From positions 179,404 to 243,403 of the IMG/VR virus record IMGVR_UViG_3300010399_000031: a stretch of DNA of 64,000 nt; one strand, given 5' to 3'. Every line of letters begins with the position of its first letter. The first letter of the stretch is position 1. The notes beneath the pieces are model-generated. The model was not told the DNA's origin. It worked only from the letters and a program-made list of their open reading frames with translations, and ran no database searches. Below are positions 11,854 to 34,398 of this stretch, piece after piece. The position numbers were made by a program, and so were the translations under genes.

Positions 11854-12142
11854 GACCGTCTACGAGATGCGTGAGGGTATGTTCTATTTTGAATGCCCAG
11901 GATGTAAGTACGGTCACGCTTTTTATACCAAGAACGGACCCATTTCAAATGGGGTAGAACAGAACTGGACGTTTAATGGAGATCTGGATAAGCCGACCAT
12001 ACGACCCAGTCTTGATGTATGTCGAGATGACCCGACGCATCGATGTCACTCGTGGATTACTGATGGGAAAATTACCTTCCTCGGTGATTGTTTTCACAGT
12101 TTAAAAGGGCAGACTCTCGACATACCAGAGCTTGAAGATTGA
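11834..12142 (+). CDS. DUF6527-like zinc-binding protein
   Basis: FECPGC..H, WTFNGD..KPT..PS, CHSWITDG.I.FL.DC.H.L.GQT; SD GGGAG. Confidence 0.7.
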   Translation: MGLRQGKTVYEMREGMFYFECPGCKYGHAFYTKNGPISNGVEQNWTFNGDLDKPTIRPSLDVCRDDPTHRCHSWITDGKITFLGDCFHSLKGQTLDIPELED

Positions 12143-12226
12143 GAAATGAAAAACTATACACCAAGTTTATCCTCTGAAGGGACGAACTGTTCCCATTTCA
12201 GATTTTGAAGATTAGGAGAATCAAAA

Positions 12227-12337
12227 ATGCGATACGTCCAAGTGGCAATGGAAACGAACAAAGGTACTATCGTGCTCGAACTCGATCAAGAGAAAGCACC
12301 GAAGACGGTGGAGAACTTTCTAAAGTATGTCGAGTGA
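12227..12337 (+). pseudogene. 36-aa N-terminal fragment of a cyclophilin-type PPIase
   Basis: MRYVQVAMETNKGTIVLELDQEKAPKTVENFLKYVE matches the PpiA/PpiB N-terminus; SD AGGAG; stops before the active site. Confidence 0.75.
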
Positions 12338-12347
12338 CATCATCGAG

Positions 12348-12477
12348 AGATGGTTAAAAGCCGTCCGGGAGGTTTTCCCCAATGTAGGAACGGGAGAACC
12401 TCTTCGAACCATTCAAGAGGTCCGGGTCGCGCAAAAACCCCCGGTTGTCGATTCTAAACCGACTACGGCCGTCATCT
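12348..12477 (+). ncRNA. cloverleaf-like structured RNA
   Basis: closing GCCGT/ACGGC (12360/12465); internal hairpins CCTCTT/AAGAGG, CCGGG/CCCGG and GTCG-ATTCTAAAC-CGAC; no ORF. Confidence 0.5.
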
Positions 12478-12496
12478 TACCTTTCGTGAGAAAATC

Positions 12497-12808
12497 ATGA
12501 ATACAAAGCTCGATCGTGCAATTGATGCTTTCCTCAACGTGTACGGCGACTTGGAAGGGCTGGAGCGCGCGCAATTCCACGCGATTCTGGCCGACCATTT
12601 AGCCGACGCTATCTCGGATGCAGAGAATGCGGTACAAGCCGTTGCACTCACGGAGCATCGGCGTACGCTGCATACGGTACCGACAGCGCTTGATTGTCTT
12701 GCCAAAGAAGTCGTCGCACGACAAACCAACGCAGCAGTCGAATGGTTACTCAATGCGCATAACCCTGTCGGTTCTGAATTGGAATGCGCGCGGTTTATTT
12801 CTCATTGA
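12497..12808 (+). CDS. hypothetical protein
   Basis: ORF on the coding strand. Confidence 0.65.
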   Translation: MNTKLDRAIDAFLNVYGDLEGLERAQFHAILADHLADAISDAENAVQAVALTEHRRTLHTVPTALDCLAKEVVARQTNAAVEWLLNAHNPVGSELECARFISH

Positions 12809-12829
12809 ACCGGGTAGGAAGGAGACTTA

Positions 12830-13369
12830 ATGCTCACAATCGTCGAGCATCATTCTAGCAGTTATGGTCCAAGGACGTTTCATAACGCAAAAGCTGCTGA
12901 TTTGACAGTGGCCATTGCGGTGGATTACTCCACATTTGGTGAAAAGCTCACCATGAAAGCGGCAGGCTCGCACTTTATCGCTTGTCCGTTTAAGACGGAT
13001 GCTTTAACCAATGCCAGAGAGCTTTATAAGTCGCTGTACCGCTGGCGTGCCTCAGTACTCAATGTGGCCGGTAACGGGATGTCTACGTTTGTCAAACATG
13101 ACGTAACGCAAGAACAAGTGAATCAGTACATCTTTGATATCCTCTCGACTGTGCACAAACATTACCCTCTAGCTGGGATTGTATCTGGGGGTCAAACGGG
13201 TGCCGATATTGCAGGTGCAGCCGTGGGGTACAAGTTGGGCATTGCTACGACTGTGACATTGCCCCATGGGTTTAAACAGCGCGATACAACAGGTGTCGAT
13301 AGCAACCACACTCAAAAAGAGATTCGCCAGCAGATCCTTGATTTCGCAGAGAAAATTTACGCTGCGTGA
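12830..13369 (+). CDS. YpsA/SLOG-family (putative molybdenum-carrier-like) nucleotide-binding protein
   Basis: 'YGPRTFHNAKAADLT', 'VLNVAGN', 'IVSGGQTGADIAG'. Confidence 0.75.
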   Translation: MLTIVEHHSSSYGPRTFHNAKAADLTVAIAVDYSTFGEKLTMKAAGSHFIACPFKTDALTNARELYKSLYRWRASVLNVAGNGMSTFVKHDVTQEQVNQYIFDILSTVHKHYPLAGIVSGGQTGADIAGAAVGYKLGIATTVTLPHGFKQRDTTGVDSNHTQKEIRQQILDFAEKIYAA

Positions 13370-13395
13370 AATAATGTGCGAGAAACCATTGATGC

Positions 13396-13506
13396 GCAGT
13401 GTAGAGCCAGTGTACCCAGCTGAGGGAGAGGGGTTAAGCAGCTGGGGCGACTTGACACATGCTGATGCCCTCCATCATCATCGATGTTTCTGGGTAATAC
13501 CACTGC
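13396..13506 (+). ncRNA. structured RNA, unknown
   Basis: GCAGTG/CACTGC closing stem; CCCAGCTG/CAGCTGGG; TGATG/CATCA. Confidence 0.45.
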
Positions 13507-13527
13507 ACGGCTGCGGTGCAGGCGCAT

Positions 13528-13606
13528 GGGCGAGGGGTATCCACTCCCGGACGGAGAGTCTAGACAGTATAGGCTTTGTTGGGTTCGAATCCCAACCTTG
13601 GCCTCA
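13528..13606 (+). ncRNA. tRNA-like RNA with canonical T-arm
   Basis: GTTGGG-TTCGAAT-CCCAAC T-arm; acceptor-like GGGCGAGG/CCTTGGCC; non-canonical D and anticodon arms. Confidence 0.6.
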
Positions 13607-13625
13607 GCGACAGCAGAAGGATTGT

Positions 13626-13755
13626 GAGGAAGGCTAGGGAATCGATGATCCCAGCAGCGAATACCCCGTTTGCTGCCGAGTCGTAGTAACTGATCCTCGT
13701 GATGGGACGAGGTGTTGGTTGGCTCATTGCAGGTTCAATTCCTGCCCTTAACCTC
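13626..13755 (+). ncRNA. extended tRNA-like RNA with T-arm
   Basis: GCAGG-TTCAATT-CCTGC T-arm; GAGG-AAGG/CCTT-AA-CCTC closing stem; three internal hairpins. Confidence 0.55.
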
Positions 13756-13869
13756 GTTTTCTTTAGACCACTTAAGTGGCACATTGTTGGGTCTCGCCTT
13801 CACTGTTTCACTCCTGGGCGACTGCCATGACTTGACGATGCGCCAACCTAAGTAGTTTCTTGTAGTAGA

Positions 13870-13954
13870 CCCGAGGTAGCTCAGTCTGGTAGAGCGGCGT
13901 CTGTCCGGCCGGTAAAGACGCAGGTCGGTGGTTCAAATCCATCCCGAGGGGCCA
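13870..13954 (+). tRNA. aberrant tRNA (15-nt anticodon loop, encoded CCA; isotype undetermined)
   Basis: D-arm GCTC-AGTCTGGTA-GAGC; anticodon stem GCGTC/GACGC; T-arm GGTGG-TTCAAAT-CCATC; acceptor CCCGAGG/CCGAGGG; G73-CCA. Confidence 0.8.
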
Positions 13955-14013
13955 ATTTCGATAGTATCTGTAACACCCACGGCAGAGATGCCACTTACTA
14001 GGACTAGACCATC

Positions 14014-14304
14014 ATGTTGTATTTGAAAGTAATGTCGAATGAAGATTTACCGGATACCGATCCGCTTAAGGATTTCAGCATCATTCCGATCAATAACACT
14101 GATCGATTGGTGTTTGTGAAGGACCAGTCTTATCCTGAAACGGATGTGCACTGGTGTGCGCTGATTGGTCCTCACGCAGGGTCGAACCAGGATGGATTTG
14201 ACATTCCCAGTCACGACAAAGACCGAGTGGTCCCCTTAACTGGCAACGCCTATGTTTTGAACGAGCAAGGCAAAACCATCGCCAGTCACGGTGTCGTGAA
14301 ATAA
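14014..14304 (+). CDS. hypothetical protein
   Basis: 'MLYLKVMSNE...LTGNAYVLNEQGKTI'; SD AGGA. Confidence 0.75.
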   Translation: MLYLKVMSNEDLPDTDPLKDFSIIPINNTDRLVFVKDQSYPETDVHWCALIGPHAGSNQDGFDIPSHDKDRVVPLTGNAYVLNEQGKTIASHGVVK

Positions 14305-14950
14305 AGCTGTCTGATGAGCCGTGCAAGTCGGCAGATGAGAATCCAATACACGCGATACCTCGCCGCGTGTGGATTTCGTCGGGTGCAAAGCCCACGAAAT
14401 AACGAAGATCACATCGTGTGTCTTGGAAGGACCTCACGGTGGTAGGCCAGATTGCTTAGGACGTCGATGAGCCACTTTGACCGGTGGTGTCCCGAGAGCA
14501 TCTACCTTTTAGATCTTCGTGATTACAGCGGGCGCGCGATGCGTCAAGTTGTGACCTTCTAACCGAATGGAGGAAGGACGCAGCCTGTAAGAACCTATCT
14601 GGGTGAAAGCAGACACCCGTGGACTGACCTCCACGTGAGGTAACGACTGGTCAGAATCGTTATCGAAGATTTAGGTATCTTACGGGGTGCGGAAGTTATG
14701 AATCCGAACCGATGCCTCGCCGGCATTCGCCGAGGAGGGAGTCGCTTGATTCCCTCCTCACACTAGCCTTCATCTTCCCGCAGCTTCGAGTCACACCACC
14801 ATTCGTGTTCGGCAAATCCGAGCGAGTTGGGGCAATGTGCCTAGGCTGCGGGAAGATGTGGGTTGGTCGACCTTGCATCGATGCGCTTTGAGTTGATGGG
14901 TCATGGGAAGAGGGGCGGGGGAGGGCTAAAGCTCTCCCCCAATCCTTATT
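14305..14950 (+). ncRNA. large structured ncRNA (about 640 nt), class unknown
   Basis: many nested helices, a 14-bp perfect stem (14771-14784/14845-14858) and a candidate kissing loop CTGACC/GGTCAG; ends in hairpin 14917-14940. Confidence 0.7.
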
Positions 14951-14980
14951 TATGCCGGAAAAAAAGGATGAGATAAGAAA

Positions 14981-15436
14981 ATGAAATACTGGATTGATGC
15001 AGAATTCAACTCATACGGGGGTCAGTTGATTTCCCTTGGAATGGTGCGTGAAGACAATGAAAGTCTTTACCTGGTGTATAACCGACCGATGCACATTCAT
15101 CCCTGGGTGAAAGAGCATGTGATGCCGTATTTGGATTCAGTGCCAGATCATATTTCGATTCATCGGATCTTTCCCTCCAATTCAGCTAAGTACATCGAGA
15201 AGTTTATGGCGAGTGATGACAATCCTATCGTTATCACCGATTGGCCTGATGATATCTCGTTTTTCAGTGAGCTTCTTCTGACGGGGCCGGGCACGATGAT
15301 CAACATTCCACGGATATCATTTCGCATGCATCGTATAGATGCTTACCCCACGAAAGTCGAAGGTGCGGTGCAGCACAACGCCTGGTGGGATGCCGTGGCT
15401 CTGAAAGCTAAGTGCGAGGAGCTTGGCTTGGAATAA
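14981..15436 (+). CDS. DEDDh 3'-5' exoribonuclease (Rv2179c/RNase AS-like)
   Basis: IDAEFN..GG.LISLG (ExoI), WPDD (ExoII), HNAWWDA (ExoIII). Confidence 0.8.
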   Translation: MKYWIDAEFNSYGGQLISLGMVREDNESLYLVYNRPMHIHPWVKEHVMPYLDSVPDHISIHRIFPSNSAKYIEKFMASDDNPIVITDWPDDISFFSELLLTGPGTMINIPRISFRMHRIDAYPTKVEGAVQHNAWWDAVALKAKCEELGLE

Positions 15437-15463
15437 AGTAAAAAATACACCACTTTCTATTAT

Positions 15464-16020
15464 ATGCGAGAGTGCTCCGCCACAGTGGACGTCCGCCTTA
15501 ACGCTTTCTCCTTTCTGGCGTTTTAGGTCGATGACTGCAATGTTGTATCGATTGGTCGAGCACAATTTTCGCAAGCCGGAGTCGTTGTCCGGACGCGCTA
15601 ACTTTCCGTGTAGGCGCGAGAGCCTGGTTTCCGACACTTACTGGGATAGCGCCCGGCGTCGGATAAACGGAGCGGGTGGAGCTACGCTAGGCTCCATCAA
15701 GTTGTACGCATGAGTGACAGGTCGACGGCCACCCAGGAGTTCTGGTAGCCTGATAGATCGACCACCTACGGGACGCGGAGGTGCTTCCTCCAGAACACCG
15801 GTTCGCGCATCCCGACTCGTTCACTCACTGAGCGCGCAGCCTGCAATGCTGTTAGGACTGAATTCGAATAGGTCTTGATAGCATTGTGGGATGCTCGTTC
15901 GAAACGCAGATCCGCTAGTCGATTCACCAAACGACTCCACGCGCTAGGGAATTGACAATCGAACTAGGGTTTTGCTTTCGCGCATCGGTGTGGTAGGGGT
16001 GGCTTCGGCCACCCCGCTAT
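15464..16020 (+). ncRNA. large structured ncRNA (about 560 nt), class unknown
   Basis: 20-bp G-U-rich hairpin 15840-15890; long-range GGAGTCGTT/AACGACTCC; multiple stems; ends at GGGGTGGC-TTCG-GCCACCCC. Confidence 0.7.
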
Positions 16021-16049
16021 GCCGTCGTTTAAATGACTTAGGGACCATC

Positions 16050-16526
16050 ATGGACTTTCTCTACCACGGCTCAGCCTTTAAACAAGACGAATTGAAACCT
16101 GGCTTTCACCACACCGGTAAGAAAGTCAATTGGGATCAAACGGAAGCGAACATCTGGCTTTACGCCACTACGCTCCGAGAAGAAGCTATTAGCCTAGGTT
16201 TTGCTTCAGCAGTGGAAAAGCAGTACGATGTGAAGCGCTACCACACGGAAGGCAAAGACATTCACTTCGATGTAAGAAAGGGCGAGACACTCAAACCACA
16301 TGAGCTGAACGAAATCAAAGTTTATCTGTACACGATACAGTATGATAAACGTGATGGCTGGGTGAAAGTGAACAACCAGTTTAACGGGATTGACCAAGAG
16401 TACAAGACCACCCATGTCATCAAAGAGAACCTCTTTAAACGAGAGGAAATCAATGTTGAGCAATGGTTGAAAGACAAGAACTTAACCATCGCTACTGAGA
16501 GTATGCCGATCTGGGCAAAGTGGTAA
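16050..16526 (+). CDS. hypothetical protein, probable head cargo
   Basis: MDFLYHGS start; C-terminal ATE site and PIWAKW tail. Confidence 0.75.
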   Translation: MDFLYHGSAFKQDELKPGFHHTGKKVNWDQTEANIWLYATTLREEAISLGFASAVEKQYDVKRYHTEGKDIHFDVRKGETLKPHELNEIKVYLYTIQYDKRDGWVKVNNQFNGIDQEYKTTHVIKENLFKREEINVEQWLKDKNLTIATESMPIWAKW

Positions 16527-31968: not shown

Positions 31969-32015
31969 GGTTCACACCCCAGAAGCATTTTCTAAAACGC
32001 ACCAATGAGGTAATA

Positions 32016-34274
32016 ATGTCTGCTCTGACCCTTTTCCGGCATAAGGCCCCGAAAGCAACGCCGTCCGCAACCGCATTGGACGATTTCGCCCAGCAACTGC
32101 GTCAACACATCGACGGCGCTGGTGCAACGTTCAAAGATCCCTCGCTTGGCGCGGCTGCTGTTGCGATGGAGAACTTCAACGAAGACGTCGCGGGTCGCAT
32201 GACCGACACGCTGCAAGAGTTGAATGTCGCGCTCGAATCGGTGCTGCAAAACATCGGCATGCCGCTCGCTTCGGCAAACGACAAAGAAGATCCGTATCAC
32301 AAGTTTGGCGTTACCAAGACGCAGATGGAGTCCGCTATCGCTGCCGGCATCATGGCCTCGAACGTGGAAGCCGCGCTCGGCGCAACATATGCGGCCGAAT
32401 CGATGCGTGTTCAGCCGGACACGGCGTTCCGCACGACGAAGGTGATGGATGTGTTCGCGCCGGACCAAGTCTCGCCGGACAAGCGTCTTGCGCTCGAAGC
32501 GTACGACGAGAAGGACAACAAGAACGCGATGGTGTATTCGGTCGCGTACAACATGCAAGCGGCCAAGCAAGACGCGTTTGCTGAAATGTTCTTCCCGACG
32601 GTCGTCGTCACGCCCGATCAGGTTGGCTTCACGATGTCGATCCGCCTGATCAACGTGTACAACGAAGTGCGCCGCGACATCTCGGGCAAGCCCAGTCAGA
32701 ATTTCAACAAGCGCAACATCGTCCAGGCCGTGATCGACCCGACGATTCTGCGCAACGACACGACCCGTATGTACCCGGTCGTGCGTCCGGAAAGCACCGC
32801 CATGTTCGTTTCGTCGGGCGACGTCGCTCCGCGCAACATCACGCTGGATGACGGACAGGTCATCACGACTGCGCCGTTGGCGATGCAAACGGAACTCTCG
32901 CTGATCGCGATTTCGCAGACCGATGCCCTGCTTCAGACCGGCATCATGGATTCGACCGATGCGATCGATACGGCAATCGGCCTGGACAACCTGTACTTGA
33001 AACTCTCGGGTACGGTCAGCGGTACACCCACGACCGAAGTCGTGAAGTTCTCCACGCGGCGTCTGCCCCTTGCGACGTTCAACTACGCTCCGCAAGGCAA
33101 CTACCGCACGATGCTGCTGAACTTCAGCACGACGAGCCTGCTCGTAAACGGCACGACGACGAAGGTCGACGGCTCGACTTCGCAGCTGCTCACGTTGCTC
33201 CAATCGGGCAACTACAACGTGCGACTGGGTGTGTACGTCTCGGGTCAGGTGAACTGCGAACTGGGTGACACCAACATCATGGCGTCGAAGGTTTCGGTGC
33301 AATCGGTGCGCAATGCCGCCGGAGAAGCGCTCGATCTGACGACGGGCGACGGTGCAACGATCGTTGCTCTGTTTGCCAACGCCACGATGATCGGTTACGA
33401 TCTCGAAGCGCGCCGTACGAACAGCAACCGCCGTGAACGCGGTCAGTTGCTCGACACGACGTTCTACAACCAAGTGTACGCAGTGCCGCTGCGGGCTCCG
33501 ATCACGATTCCGCGTCCGCTCACGATCGGCGATGCCAACGATTCGAGCGATCTTGCCGCTCTGATCACGGCAACGCACGTGCGTACGACGAACGCGGCGA
33601 TCGACGAGCTGCTTAATGCAGCGAACGTACTTGAAGCATACGTCTCGAATCTCGACCCGCTCGGTACGATTCCGGACGTGCTCGGTGTGACGCGTTTCCT
33701 CGTGACGCCGTTCTTCGAGCGCAAGACGATCGACGTGGCTGCGGTCATCAACAACCTGACGTCGCAAAATCGTCCGGCGGATCTGTCGGCTGTGATCGTG
33801 AACTACCTGCGCGACACGGTCTACCGCATGTACACGGCGTCGGGCTACAAGGCTGCGGCTGACGCGCTCGCTGGCGGTATCGGTCCGGTTCCGACGGTCA
33901 TCATCGGTACGGATCCGACGATCGCACGCTACATCAATGTGGAAGGCGATCTGCGCACGCTCGGCGGCTCGTTCAACGTGCGTGTTGAGTCGACGCTGAA
34001 CACGAACATGGCTGGTAAGATCGTCGTGTCGTTCGGCGAATTCGGTACGGGCAAGGAAGGTGTGCCCAACCCGATGCACTTCGGTAATATGGCGTGGAAG
34101 CCGGAACTCACGCTCGTGCTGCCGCTGCACCGCAACGGCGCAAACAGCAAGGAACTCACGGTTCAGCCGTCGTTCCTGCACGTCGTGAACCTGCCGGTGA
34201 TGGCCATGTTCGACGTCGTGAACTTGTCGGCCGCTGCGACCGACAAGATCGCTATCGACTTCCACAACGTCTGA
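32016..34274 (+). CDS. major capsid protein precursor (phiKZ gp120-like)
   Basis: 752 aa; 'ALEAYD' maturation site, 'QDAFAEMFFPTVV', 'TNSNRRERG'; extreme codon bias. Confidence 0.93.
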   Translation: MSALTLFRHKAPKATPSATALDDFAQQLRQHIDGAGATFKDPSLGAAAVAMENFNEDVAGRMTDTLQELNVALESVLQNIGMPLASANDKEDPYHKFGVTKTQMESAIAAGIMASNVEAALGATYAAESMRVQPDTAFRTTKVMDVFAPDQVSPDKRLALEAYDEKDNKNAMVYSVAYNMQAAKQDAFAEMFFPTVVVTPDQVGFTMSIRLINVYNEVRRDISGKPSQNFNKRNIVQAVIDPTILRNDTTRMYPVVRPESTAMFVSSGDVAPRNITLDDGQVITTAPLAMQTELSLIAISQTDALLQTGIMDSTDAIDTAIGLDNLYLKLSGTVSGTPTTEVVKFSTRRLPLATFNYAPQGNYRTMLLNFSTTSLLVNGTTTKVDGSTSQLLTLLQSGNYNVRLGVYVSGQVNCELGDTNIMASKVSVQSVRNAAGEALDLTTGDGATIVALFANATMIGYDLEARRTNSNRRERGQLLDTTFYNQVYAVPLRAPITIPRPLTIGDANDSSDLAALITATHVRTTNAAIDELLNAANVLEAYVSNLDPLGTIPDVLGVTRFLVTPFFERKTIDVAAVINNLTSQNRPADLSAVIVNYLRDTVYRMYTASGYKAAADALAGGIGPVPTVIIGTDPTIARYINVEGDLRTLGGSFNVRVESTLNTNMAGKIVVSFGEFGTGKEGVPNPMHFGNMAWKPELTLVLPLHRNGANSKELTVQPSFLHVVNLPVMAMFDVVNLSAAATDKIAIDFHNV

Positions 34275-34281
34275 ACGCAGG

Positions 34282-34398
34282 GCATGGTGAACGTGCATGA
34301 CCTCAATGGCTTCACGCCATACTCGGGGTGACGCTTGGAGTTGAGGTCGTCAGAAGTAAGTAGAGTTTAAGCTTCTGACGCGTTCACCCGAGCCATGC
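34282..34398 (+). ncRNA. structured three-way-junction RNA in the capsid 3' region
   Basis: GGTGAACG/CGTTCACC, TGACCTCAA/TTGAGGTCG, GTCAGAAG/CTTCTGAC, GCATGG/CCATGC. Confidence 0.55.

What the first reader, a model, noticed from the sequence alone, without database searches (positions are those of the whole stretch)
12340..16025. Non-coding RNA island interleaved with RNA/nucleotide-processing enzymes
Seen: about 2 kb of this 3.7-kb stretch, in an otherwise densely coding genome, is structured non-coding sequence. It includes at least four tRNA-like elements and two large RNAs, none a clean canonical tRNA, alongside a SLOG protein and a DEDDh exoribonuclease. Inference: a co-transcribed RNA-based module (decoys for anticodon nucleases or RNA sensors, or RNP scaffolds) matured by tRNA-processing enzymes and the local exonuclease. 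This is a candidate undescribed system.
Basis: partly seen in the sequence, partly recalled or inferred. Interest (0 to 1): 0.75.

Follow-up and report, generated by a model that had tools for sequence, protein, structure and literature searches.

The report
Jumbo-phage RNA island with variant hammerhead
A soil jumbo phage carries a conserved 2-kb block of non-coding RNA genes: tRNA-like modules, an unusual self-cleaving hammerhead-type ribozyme and two large structured RNAs of an undescribed family. Large phage RNAs such as GOLLD and ROOL sit in the same kind of place, next to phage tRNA genes.

Summary
Four ORF-free gaps (12338-12496, 13370-14013, 14305-14980, 15437-16049) lie between a cpYpsA-SLOG gene, a DEDDh exonuclease and small ORFs, in a 243-kb phiKZ-like jumbo phage from a soil metagenome.

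- **Conservation.** Gaps B, C and D are better conserved than the flanking proteins in two sister phages (C 81% nt; cores of B and D 92-93%; proteins 42-84% aa). Their substitutions show no codon periodicity, every indel breaks the frame, and many changes are compensatory.
- **Expression.** A 364-nt rhizosphere metatranscriptome contig lies wholly inside gap D.
- **Gap C.** It opens with a hammerhead-type ribozyme that has a full catalytic core. Helices I and III covary across 15 representative sequences from about 13 viral lineages. An extra conserved hairpin sits between stem II and GAA, and Rfam models miss it. The predicted cut is at 14524/14525.
- **Large RNAs.** The RNA released from C and the RNA in D share ordered motifs with a homologous RNA in Burkholderia phage FLC9.
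- **Gap B.** It holds three T-arm elements; one is a degenerate tRNA-Asn. Sister phages keep intact tRNA-Ser and tRNA-Asn there.
- **Gap A.** It looks like a deletion scar beside a truncated cyclophilin gene.

Function is unknown. GOLLD and ROOL are the closest analogues, and the decoy idea is untested.

The parts
12227..12337 (+). Remnant of a cyclophilin gene (first 36 codons, then a stop). Not part of the RNA module; it marks a deletion or replacement.
   Evidence: tblastn to the full-length 194-aa gene in L001 1081-1665. The rest of the gene is nowhere in the 243-kb genome.
12338..12496 (+). Gap A: a non-conserved spacer, probably a deletion scar.
   Evidence: Fold z = -1.7. No match in L001 or L002.
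12830..13369 (+). cpYpsA-type SLOG protein.
   Evidence: PF12694 at E = 6.5e-11; phrog_10774. In phage FLC9 the homologue lies one gene upstream of the hammerhead-plus-RNA unit.
13375..13384 (+). Motif UGUGCGAGAA at the start of gap B, shared with the start of gap D (UAUGCGAGAG at 15463). It may be a transcript 5' end or part of a closing helix.
   Evidence: T[AG]TGCGAGA occurs 4 times on the + strand of the genome, 2 of them here. It is conserved in L001 and L002.
13487..13637 (+). B1: a tRNA-like four-way junction. It has a long closing stem, a hairpin, a covarying variable-arm hairpin and a T-arm (13578-13596).
   Evidence: 93% nt identity to L001 and L002. Compensatory changes in the variable arm. 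Fold.
13638..13760 (+). B2: two covarying hairpins plus a second T-arm (13729-13745), followed by CCUUAACCUCG.
   Evidence: The hairpins and the T-stem change by compensatory substitutions between the window and L001.
13870..13954 (+). Degenerate tRNA, an orthologue of tRNA-Asn(GUU) in the sister phages. D-arm, T-arm and an encoded CCA are intact. The anticodon loop is 15 nt (UGUCCGGCCGGUAAA) and 2 of 7 acceptor pairs are mismatched.
   Evidence: Rfam tRNA 39.9 bits. ARAGORN calls nothing. Alignment with the L001 and L006 tRNA-Asn genes.
14014..14304 (+). Small ORF (96 aa, phrog_10337). Present in L001 and absent in L002, so it is not essential to the module.
14306..14529 (+). Variant type-I hammerhead ribozyme. 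Helix I: 14306-14310 with 14525-14529. Core CUGAUGA: 14311-14317. P-a (stem II): 14318-14332. P-b: about 14340-14376. P-c: 14381-14393. CGAA: 14395-14398. Helix III: 14399-14410 with 14512-14523, enclosing an insert of about 100 nt. H17 is U14524. Predicted cleavage is between 14524 and 14525.
   Evidence: Parse. The same architecture is seen in 15 representative sequences from about 13 lineages, with covarying helices I, III and P-a. It starts 2 nt after the stop codon of the upstream ORF.
14525..14960 (+). C-3' RNA: a highly structured RNA of about 430 nt released by the ribozyme. Motifs: UCAAGUUGUG at 14544 and GCAGCCUG at 14580. The 'GCAGCC' domain is 14572-14695. A terminator-like hairpin lies at 14917-14940.
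   Evidence: z = -9.7 for the whole gap. 81% nt identity to L001 and L002. 21 compensatory pairs of 225. The covariance model built from the FLC9-type domain hits here. Terminator scan.
14981..15436 (+). DEDDh 3'-5' exonuclease, distantly related to Rv2179c.
   Evidence: Homologues lie in or beside tRNA clusters of other phages and near the homologous RNA in FLC9, L104/L108 and L115.
15463..16024 (+). D RNA: a structured RNA of about 560 nt. Near-invariant core at 15567-15707. Motifs: UCAAGUUGUA at 15697 and GCAGCCUG at 15836. The 'GCAGCC' hairpin domain is 15827-15899. A 3' GC-rich UUCG hairpin lies at 15987-16024.
   Evidence: z = -3.9. Core 92% identical to L001 and L002. 21 compensatory pairs of 179. 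A 364-nt metatranscriptome contig covers 15484-15847 with 1 mismatch and no cover on the flanking genes. Covariance-model hit at E = 0.0013.
16050..16526 (+). Flanking ORF (158 aa, phrog_13483, DUF6886-like, N-terminal YHGS motif). Its link to the RNAs is unknown.

Best explanation
The stretch is the non-coding RNA (tRNA) region of an uncultivated, phiKZ-like soil jumbo phage. It is read on the + strand and has three parts.

1. Gap B holds tRNA-derived modules: two T-arm-bearing tRNA-like structures and one degenerate tRNA-Asn. In sister phages this gap also carries working tRNA-Ser and tRNA-Asn genes. These modules are probably recognised by host tRNA-processing enzymes (inferred).

2. Gap C starts, 2 nt after the upstream stop codon, with a type-I hammerhead-type ribozyme. 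It has the full catalytic core, but a conserved extra hairpin (P-c, here also P-b) lies between stem II and the GAA strand. It should cut itself between U14524 and A14525. That frees a compact RNA of about 430 nt with a 5'-OH from the upstream mRNA or tRNA transcript (cleavage is inferred from sequence and covariation, not shown).

3. Gap D encodes a second RNA of about 560 nt, which appears to begin near its own 5' motif (UAUGCGAGAG at 15463).

The two large RNAs share ordered motifs (UCAAGUUGUR, then a GCAGCC-closed domain) with each other and with RNAs that follow the same ribozyme in Burkholderia phage FLC9 and other viral contigs. They therefore look like members of one undescribed family of large phage RNAs.

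My best guess for their role is that they are stable, trans-acting structured RNAs of the phage's tRNA/translation region. That makes them functional analogues of GOLLD and ROOL rather than protein-coding or purely regulatory sequence. What they act on is unknown.
For: Real and selected:
- Gap C is 81% and the cores of B and D are 92-93% nt identical to L001 and L002. The neighbouring proteins are only 42-84% aa identical, and the three flanking genes compared at DNA level (SLOG, exonuclease, ORF160) 57-71% nt identical.
- There is no codon periodicity and all indels break the frame.
- 21 compensatory pairs of 225 in C and 21 of 179 in D.
- Gap C folds with z = -9.7.

Expressed:
- A 364-nt contig from a rhizosphere metatranscriptome covers 15484-15847 with 1 mismatch at depth 9.6. 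The rest of the 4.2-kb stretch has almost no cover (two 37-nt partial matches of low identity), and the exonuclease gene and ORF160 have none.

Hammerhead:
- CUGAUGA, YGAA, A15.1-U16.1 (13 of 15 sequences), H17 never G, and GUC, GUA or CUC triplets are present.
- Helix I pairs in 73 of 73 cells and helix III in 57 of 58, each with several pair types per position, in 15 representative sequences.
- P-a covaries (GCCG/CGGC, ACGG/CCGU, GUGG/CCAC) in sequences found without fixing its sequence.
- 18 of 26 distinct pattern matches with the conserved P-a loop give a full parse. The figure is 1 of 16 for other loops and 4.8% at random positions.
- The helix I change GCUGU/ACAGC to GCUCU/AGAGC between the window and FLC9 is compensatory.

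Family of large RNAs:
- The ordered motifs occur in C, D, FLC9-type RNAs, L114, L115 and L118.
- A covariance model built only from FLC9-type sequences ranks the predicted sites in D (E = 0.0013) and C (E = 0.011) first and second in the window, and the predicted site first in L118.

Context:
- tRNAs or T-arms lie next to the unit in L001, L002, L114, L115 and L136.
Against: - No experiment shows cleavage. Rfam's hammerhead models do not reach threshold on any copy; the best is 18.3 bits against a gathering score of 48.5.
- An insertion next to G12 has no precedent that I could find, and a UUCG...CGAA pairing could compete with the active fold.
- Covariation in C and D rests on only two lineages.
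- The covariance-model support for C/D/FLC9 homology is weak: 12-15 bits, and in L001 the hits sit among noise.
- The RNA-seq evidence is one assembled contig from one metatranscriptome, and DNA carry-over cannot be excluded. Gap C has only a 5% word share in one RNA run.
- Each RNA lies directly upstream of a same-strand gene, so a leader role is possible.
- The window's own lineage has lost or damaged its tRNAs and a cyclophilin gene, which shows some decay in this region.
Confidence: 0.55

Rival explanations
1. The large RNAs are long structured 5' leaders (cis-regulatory elements, for example attenuators or translation controllers) of the genes that follow them: the exonuclease after C, ORF 16050 after D, and an unrelated ORF after the FLC9-type RNA. 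On this view they are not independent RNAs.
For: - Every RNA lies directly upstream of a same-strand ORF.
- Gap C ends in a terminator-like hairpin 40 nt before the exonuclease start codon.
- The FLC9-type RNA runs up to the ribosome-binding site of the next ORF.
- A conserved hairpin sequesters GGAGGA.
- Hammerheads are known to cut phage polycistronic transcripts between genes (PMC3088659).
Against: - The downstream gene differs between lineages while the RNA is kept.
- At 430-560 nt they are much larger than known leaders.
- The RNAs are more conserved than the genes they would regulate.
- The metatranscriptome contig stops about 200 nt before ORF 16050 and gives no cover on that ORF.
Confidence: 0.2
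2. One reading: the island is an anti-defence module. Its tRNA-like elements and large RNAs would act as decoys or sponges for host anticodon nucleases, RNA sensors or other RNA-binding defence proteins, perhaps together with the SLOG, exonuclease and ART-like neighbours.
For: - The degenerate tRNA keeps its D-arm, its T-arm (through compensatory changes) and an encoded CCA, yet cannot decode.
- B1 and B2 are conserved tRNA mimics.
- The SLOG and exonuclease genes recur near the homologous RNA in FLC9-like phages.
Against: - No defence-related family was identified.
- The genome encodes no Ro/Rsr or RtcB partner.
- Sister phages carry ordinary decoding tRNAs at the same place, so the degenerate copy may simply be decaying.
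- Nothing links the large RNAs to any defence system.
Confidence: 0.15
3. The region is a decaying tRNA cluster plus spacer DNA with no function of its own, and the apparent structure comes from composition.
For: - The window's lineage lost tRNA-Ser, has a disrupted tRNA-Asn and a truncated cyclophilin gene, and gap A is not conserved.
- Gaps A and B fold no better than shuffles.
Against: - C, D and B1 are more conserved than the adjacent proteins.
- Compensatory changes are frequent.
- Gap C folds with z = -9.7.
- Homologous units occur in distant phages.
- A transcript contig exists for D.
Confidence: 0.07

Closest known systems
Hammerhead ribozyme, type I (Rfam RF00163 / clan CL00010); phage and prophage intergenic hammerheads (Perreault et al. 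2011, PMC3088659)
   Same: - It has the same catalytic core: C3 U4 G5 A6 N7 G8 A9, G12 A13 A14, A15.1-U16.1 and H17.
- Helix I is open-ended and helix III is closed.
- The cleavage triplets are GUC, GUA, CUC, GUU or AUU.
- It lies between genes in phage genomes, where hammerheads are thought to cut long transcripts.
   Different: - A conserved hairpin (P-c, consensus GGGUGAAAAGCCC) plus a linker lies between stem II (P-a, with conserved loop U[GU]N[AG]AGU) and G12. Often a further hairpin (P-b) lies there too.
- Helix III can carry inserts of 55-100 nt.
- No Rfam hammerhead model reaches threshold on any copy.
- Activity is untested.
GOLLD and ROOL large ornate RNAs (Rfam RF01998, RF03087; Kretsch et al., bioRxiv 10.1101/2024.12.08.627333)
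   Same: - They are large (about 400-800 nt), intricately structured RNAs of unknown function, encoded by phages.
- They often lie in or beside tRNA islands.
- No protein partner is known.
   Different: - Neither Rfam model matches, even at E <= 10.
- The sequence motifs differ.
- The hosts are jumbo phages of soil Proteobacteria-type hosts, and two paralogues lie in one locus.
- One paralogue is released by a ribozyme.
- Multimer or cage formation is untested.
Y RNA-like YrlA (Rfam RF02553) and other tRNA mimics
   Same: B1 has a long closing stem that encloses a T-arm-containing multi-helix domain. That is the general plan of YrlA. Weak YrlA hits occur among the tRNA-like elements of the related locus L114.
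   Different: - YrlA gives no hit in the window at E <= 10.
- The phage encodes no Rsr/Ro (TROVE) or RtcB protein.
Phage tRNA gene clusters
   Same: The position, the strand and the T-arm and D-arm sequences match. The sister phages have tRNA-Ser(GCU) and tRNA-Asn(GUU) in the same gap.
   Different: The window's genome has no tRNA that ARAGORN accepts. Its only tRNA-model hit has a 15-nt anticodon loop.
Rv2179c-type DEDDh 3'-5' exoribonuclease (PDB 4OKE, 6S0M)
   Same: The DEDDh residues are present and the profile matches at E = 4e-8 over the N-terminal half.
   Different: It gives no Pfam hit. It belongs to a phage-specific family (phrog_2259, labelled 'RNase H'). Its substrate is unknown.

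Membership tests
Hammerhead ribozyme | Conserved core strands CUGANGA and GAA | tested here: met
   CUGAUGA at 14311-14317 and (C)GAA at 14395-14398. The same is seen in all 15 representative sequences; the base before GAA is C in 14 and U in 1.
Hammerhead ribozyme | Helix III closed by A15.1-U16.1, followed by H17 (not G) at the cleavage site | tested here: met
   In the window, A14399 pairs with U14523 and H17 is U14524. A-U is present in 13 of 15 sequences (G-C in L107, U-A in L139). H17 is C, A or U in all 15.
Hammerhead ribozyme | Helices I and III supported by covariation | tested here: met
   Helix I pairs in 73 of 73 cells, with 3-4 pair types at each position. Helix III positions 2-4 pair in 42 of 43 cells, with 3-5 pair types.
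Hammerhead ribozyme | Stem II directly joins A9 to G12, giving a simple three-helix junction | tested here: not met
   P-a follows A9 directly. A linker plus hairpin P-c (with or without P-b), then N and C, lie between P-a and G12 in every copy.
Hammerhead ribozyme | Reaches the Rfam gathering score | tested here: not met
   No hit in the window, FLC9 or L107 at E <= 10. The best is Hammerhead_3 at 18.3 bits against 48.5, in L139 and L144.
Hammerhead ribozyme | Site-specific self-cleavage that leaves a 2',3'-cyclic phosphate and a 5'-OH | not testable with these tools
   This needs in vitro transcription or end-specific RNA-seq. The one read-laying run showed no reads over gap C in the RNA run.
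tRNA (element 13870-13954) | Cloverleaf that scores above the Rfam tRNA threshold | tested here: met
   39.9 bits against 29.
tRNA (element 13870-13954) | 7-nt anticodon loop and a fully paired acceptor stem, as a decoding tRNA needs | tested here: not met
   The loop is 15 nt. Acceptor pairs 4-69 and 5-68 are G.A and A.G. ARAGORN rejects it unless an 'intron' is allowed.
GOLLD / ROOL | Match to the family covariance model | tested here: not met
   No match at E <= 10 over 12000-16400, nor in L001, L002, L114, L115 or L118 at E <= 1.
GOLLD / ROOL | Large phage-encoded structured RNA next to tRNA genes | tested here: met
   context as described in bioRxiv 10.1101/2024.12.08.627333.
GOLLD / ROOL | Self-assembly into RNA-only multimers or cages | not testable with these tools
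   Needs native gels or cryo-EM.
YrlA (Y RNA-like) | Match to RF02553 and a linked Rsr (TROVE) gene | tested here: not met
   No hit in the window. No TROVE or RtcB gene in the genome, which CheckV rates 81% complete.
DEDDh exonuclease (14981-15436) | Exo I DxE, Exo II D and Exo III Hx4D motifs | tested here: met
   D6, E8, D87, H132 and D137 are invariant in 16 homologues. The profile matches Rv2179c at E = 4e-8.
DEDDh exonuclease (14981-15436) | Match to a curated Pfam family above its cut-off | tested here: not met
   None of the 16 members gives a relevant Pfam hit.
cpYpsA SLOG (12830-13369) | Match to PF12694 above the gathering score | tested here: met
   42.6 bits against 26.2.

The most novel reading that the evidence does not exclude
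The island encodes two things that appear to be undescribed.

- A distinct structural class of hammerhead ribozyme, in which a two- or three-hairpin module replaces the simple stem II. It is spread across unrelated viruses of bacteria and perhaps archaea.
- A new family of large 'ornate' phage RNAs, present as two paralogues in this phage. Like GOLLD and ROOL, they would act as free RNA machines or assemblies in the tRNA/translation sphere of nucleus-forming jumbo phages. They might work together with the recurrent DEDDh exonuclease, the SLOG protein and the ART-like neighbour.
Probability: 0.3. Interest if true: 0.85.

Novelty: new variant of a known kind. Interest (0 to 1): 0.72.

Why it matters
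- **Hammerhead design.** The hammerhead is the best-studied small ribozyme. A natural, recurrent architecture with a conserved hairpin inserted beside G12 would extend what the catalytic core can tolerate, and it would explain why model-based scans miss such copies.
- **Large phage RNAs.** Large structured phage RNAs next to tRNA islands (GOLLD, ROOL) are a current open problem. This is another family, with a culturable carrier (Burkholderia phage FLC9) and natural expression evidence. It offers a second, independent system in which to ask what such RNAs do.
- **Jumbo phages.** This lineage is related to the phiKZ-like phages, which transcribe inside a nucleus-like compartment. For such phages it shows that part of the 'tRNA region' is given over to non-decoding RNAs under strong selection.

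Tried and rejected
- **Known RNA families.** Rfam at gathering and at E <= 10 gave only one tRNA hit. There was no group I or II intron, RNase P, tmRNA, 6S, GOLLD, ROOL, HEARO, OLE, raiA, YrlA or hammerhead hit.
- **Intron-containing tRNAs.** ARAGORN with introns allowed gives only spurious calls with long 'introns'.
- **Split or intron-interrupted cyclophilin.** Rejected: the rest of the gene is absent from the genome.
- **RNase P-like reading of GGAGGAAGGAC.** Rejected: no model support.
- **Y-RNA/Ro system.** The genome has no TROVE or RtcB gene.
- **More homologues of B and D.** nhmmer over all 150 or so fetched loci, plus two exact-pattern scans, found only L001, L002 and their metagenome twins.
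- **Synteny through ORF 16050.** Its phiKZ-like homologues (Noxifer, DT01) have no RNA island beside them.
- **The phages collection.** No nucleotide match at blastn sensitivity.
- **A covariance model of the compact hammerheads.** Not built, because MAFFT misaligned the 3' halves. I parsed the elements by script instead.
- **2H-phosphoesterase reading of ORF 16050.** Rejected: the second His is not conserved.

Full report
**Setting.** The window is the last 64 kb of a single 243,403-bp contig with 50% G+C. The contig is identical to a soil-metagenome contig (L116) and is held by soil and rhizosphere runs. Its helicase is about 43% identical to those of phiKZ-like jumbo phages (Burkholderia FLC9, Ralstonia RP12, Klebsiella Eowyn). 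ORF 16050-16526 has homologues only in phiKZ-like phages. I therefore treat it as an uncultivated phiKZ-like jumbo phage.

**Conservation shows that B, C and D are functional RNA.** Two IMG/VR contigs (L001, 244.6 kb; L002, 159 kb) are syntenic sister phages. Their proteins in this region are 42-84% identical to the window's. At DNA level the three flanking genes compared (SLOG, exonuclease, ORF160) are 57-71% identical. Gap C, in contrast, aligns at 81% over 680 nt with invariant runs of up to 66 nt. The cores of B and D are 92-93% identical.

Substitutions in C and D are spread evenly over the three phases, and all 26 indel runs break the reading frame. The flanking genes show the usual third-position excess. 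RNAalifold finds 21 pairs with compensatory double changes in C (of 225) and 21 in D (of 179). Gap C folds 9.7 sd better than shuffles and gap D 3.9 sd better.

Gap A is different. It folds no better than shuffles and has no counterpart in the sister phages. It follows a cyclophilin gene truncated after 36 codons, and the rest of that gene is nowhere in the genome. I read gap A as a deletion scar.

**Expression.** In a rhizosphere metatranscriptome (run X6) a 364-nt contig, at depth 9.6, matches 15484-15847 inside gap D with one mismatch. The rest of the 4.2-kb stretch has almost no cover in that run: only two 37-nt partial matches of low identity, and nothing on the flanking genes. A DNA run (X8) holds a copy of D diverged by about 13%. 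It also holds a 36-nt node from the D core at depth 100, so the core is shared by many variants.

**Gap B.** The T-loop pattern GGTTCRANTCC occurs five times in the whole genome (both strands), and three of those lie within 350 nt here.

- B1 (13487-13637) folds as a four-way junction: a 16-bp closing stem, a hairpin, a variable-arm hairpin that changes by compensatory substitutions, and a T-arm.
- B2 has two covarying hairpins and a T-arm whose closing pair changes from G-C to A-U.
- The third element (13870-13954) is the positional orthologue of tRNA-Asn(GUU) in L001 and L002. It shares the leader, the D-arm and the CCA, and its T-stem is kept through compensatory changes. Its anticodon loop, however, is 15 nt, and two acceptor pairs are G.A and A.G.

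L001 and L002 carry intact tRNA-Ser(GCU) and tRNA-Asn(GUU) in this gap. Gap B is therefore a tRNA cluster in which some units are conserved non-decoding mimics (B1, B2) and one is a damaged tRNA.

**Gap C begins with a variant hammerhead.** Two nt after the stop codon of ORF 14014-14304 the sequence reads, in order:

- GCUGU (helix I, 3' strand);
- CUGAUGA (core);
- GCCG-UGCAAGU-CGGC (P-a);
- hairpin P-b;
- GGGU-GCAAA-GCCC (P-c);
- A, then CGAA;
- a 12-position helix III (11 pairs, one mismatch) that encloses an insert of about 100 nt;
- U14524 (H17), then the predicted cut;
- ACAGC (helix I, 5' strand).

Phage FLC9 has a compact version just downstream of its SLOG homologue. There helix I is GCUCU/AGAGC, a compensatory change relative to the window, and helix III is a simple 7-bp hairpin.

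Exact-pattern scans for the core plus P-a found further copies in IMG/VR, JGI metagenomes and one Thaumarchaeota MAG contig. Scans that fixed P-c instead of P-a found copies in which P-a covaries: ACGG/CCGU and GUGG/CCAC.

Across 15 representative sequences from about 13 lineages:

- helix I pairs in 73 of 73 cells, with 3-4 pair types per position;
- helix III pairs in 57 of 58 cells;
- 15.1-16.1 is A-U in 13;
- H17 is never G;
- the base before GAA is C in 14 and U in 1.

A strict parser accepts 18 of 26 distinct matches that have the conserved P-a loop. It accepts 1 of 16 chance matches with other loops, and 4.8% of random positions.

Rfam's hammerhead models do not reach threshold on any copy; the best score is 18.3 bits against 48.5. 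The published survey of natural hammerhead variation describes one- or two-bp stems II, core insertions and U15.1-A16.1 variants. In the passages my term searches of that paper returned, I saw no hairpin between stem II and G12 (PMC3088659). I therefore file this as something that works like a hammerhead, with one defining feature (the simple three-way junction) not met. Cleavage itself is inferred.

In compact copies the cut lies just upstream of a ribosome-binding site or ORF (L107, L109). In L002 and L136 the ribozyme follows a tRNA by 9-25 nt. Both arrangements fit a transcript-processing role.

**C-3' and D look like paralogues of a wider family.** The motifs UCAAGUUGUR and GCAGCCUG occur in this order in C (14544, 14580) and in D (15697, 15836). 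Each occurs only seven times in the whole genome, both strands counted. The same motifs, and a GCAGCC...UGYGG...UGC-closed domain, occur in the RNA that follows the ribozyme in FLC9-type contigs and in L118; recognisable variants of both occur in L114 and L115.

A covariance model built only from five FLC9-type sequences found a further FLC9-type copy with compensatory changes (L110, E = 4e-28). With filters off it ranked 15827-15899 (D, E = 0.0013) and 14572-14695 (C, E = 0.011) first and second in a 2.8-kb search; the next hit was at E = 0.64. It also ranked the expected site first in L118 (E = 0.021). In L001 the corresponding sites scored among noise. This is consistent but weak support.

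tRNAs or T-arm elements flank the unit in L114, L115 and L136. An exonuclease homologue lies about 3.5-4.4 kb downstream in FLC9, L104/L108 and L115.

**What it most likely is.** It is a conserved RNA operon of the phage's tRNA region. The parts are tRNA-like modules, a self-cleaving ribozyme that frees a 430-nt RNA, and a second RNA of about 560 nt that appears to begin near its own 5' motif. The motif UGCGAGAR marks the starts of both B and D.

The closest known analogues of the large RNAs are GOLLD and ROOL: phage-encoded, often near tRNA islands, and of unknown function (bioRxiv 10.1101/2024.12.08.627333). The Rfam models for those families do not match, so this is not a member of either. 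A catalogue of 10,006 candidate structured RNAs from IMG/VR exists (PMC10690425). I could not check whether parts of these RNAs are listed there.

**Limits.**
- No cleavage assay was possible.
- Only two lineages inform the structures of C and D.
- Only one metatranscriptome contig supports expression.
- P-a was fixed by most of the searches.
- The table was transcribed by hand from the outputs.

Noticed in passing
window 12227-12337: A cyclophilin (PPIase) gene is truncated after 36 codons. It is full length (194 aa) in the sister phage L001 (1081-1665). The remainder is absent from the whole 243-kb genome, and two further L001 ORFs are missing here as well.
   Followed up: yes
window 16050-16526: The ORF just after gap D (phrog_13483) starts MDFLYHGS, an H-G-S motif of the kind found in ART/PARP-type folds. 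Its Atlas neighbours are DUF6886 and, weakly (TM about 0.5), Arr-type ADP-ribosyltransferases. Homologues occur only in phiKZ-like phages, and in Noxifer and DT01 they have no RNA island beside them.
   Followed up: partly
L114 1-2400 (Ga0265780_10000427, 65.6-kb contig): More than ten tRNA or tRNA-like hits lie within 2 kb upstream of a hammerhead variant. Several carry inserts of 30-60 nt, one has a 4-base 'anticodon' call, and there are sub-threshold Y-RNA-like (YrlA) hits. This is a second, richer 'non-canonical tRNA island'.
   Followed up: partly
window 13903-13910: The enlarged anticodon loop of the degenerate tRNA contains the 8-nt palindrome CCGGCCGG. It looks like an insertion into, or a remodelling of, the GUU anticodon loop of the ancestral tRNA-Asn.
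   Followed up: partly
L149 1251-1360 (Thaumarchaeota MAG contig DAHVLJ010000002.1): This was the only match to the variant hammerhead pattern among the 185,579 species-representative genomes scanned. It has a GUC cleavage triplet and a P-b hairpin. It may sit in a virus or provirus binned with an archaeon.
   Followed up: partly
window 15584-15619: In DNA run X8 this 36-nt piece of the D core forms its own assembly node at depth about 100, against about 6 for the surrounding diverged copy. Many D-type variants therefore seem to coexist in that rhizosphere sample.
   Followed up: no
L003, L004 and L006 (loci with exonuclease homologues): Homologues of the DEDDh exonuclease in other phage contigs lie inside or next to dense tRNA clusters: 7-9 T-loop motifs in L003 and L004, and four tRNAs in L006.
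   Followed up: partly
window 31992-34298 (-) and 32016-34274 (+): Two ORFs of about 760 aa are open on opposite strands over the same 2.3 kb, in a stretch with 58% G+C.
   Followed up: no
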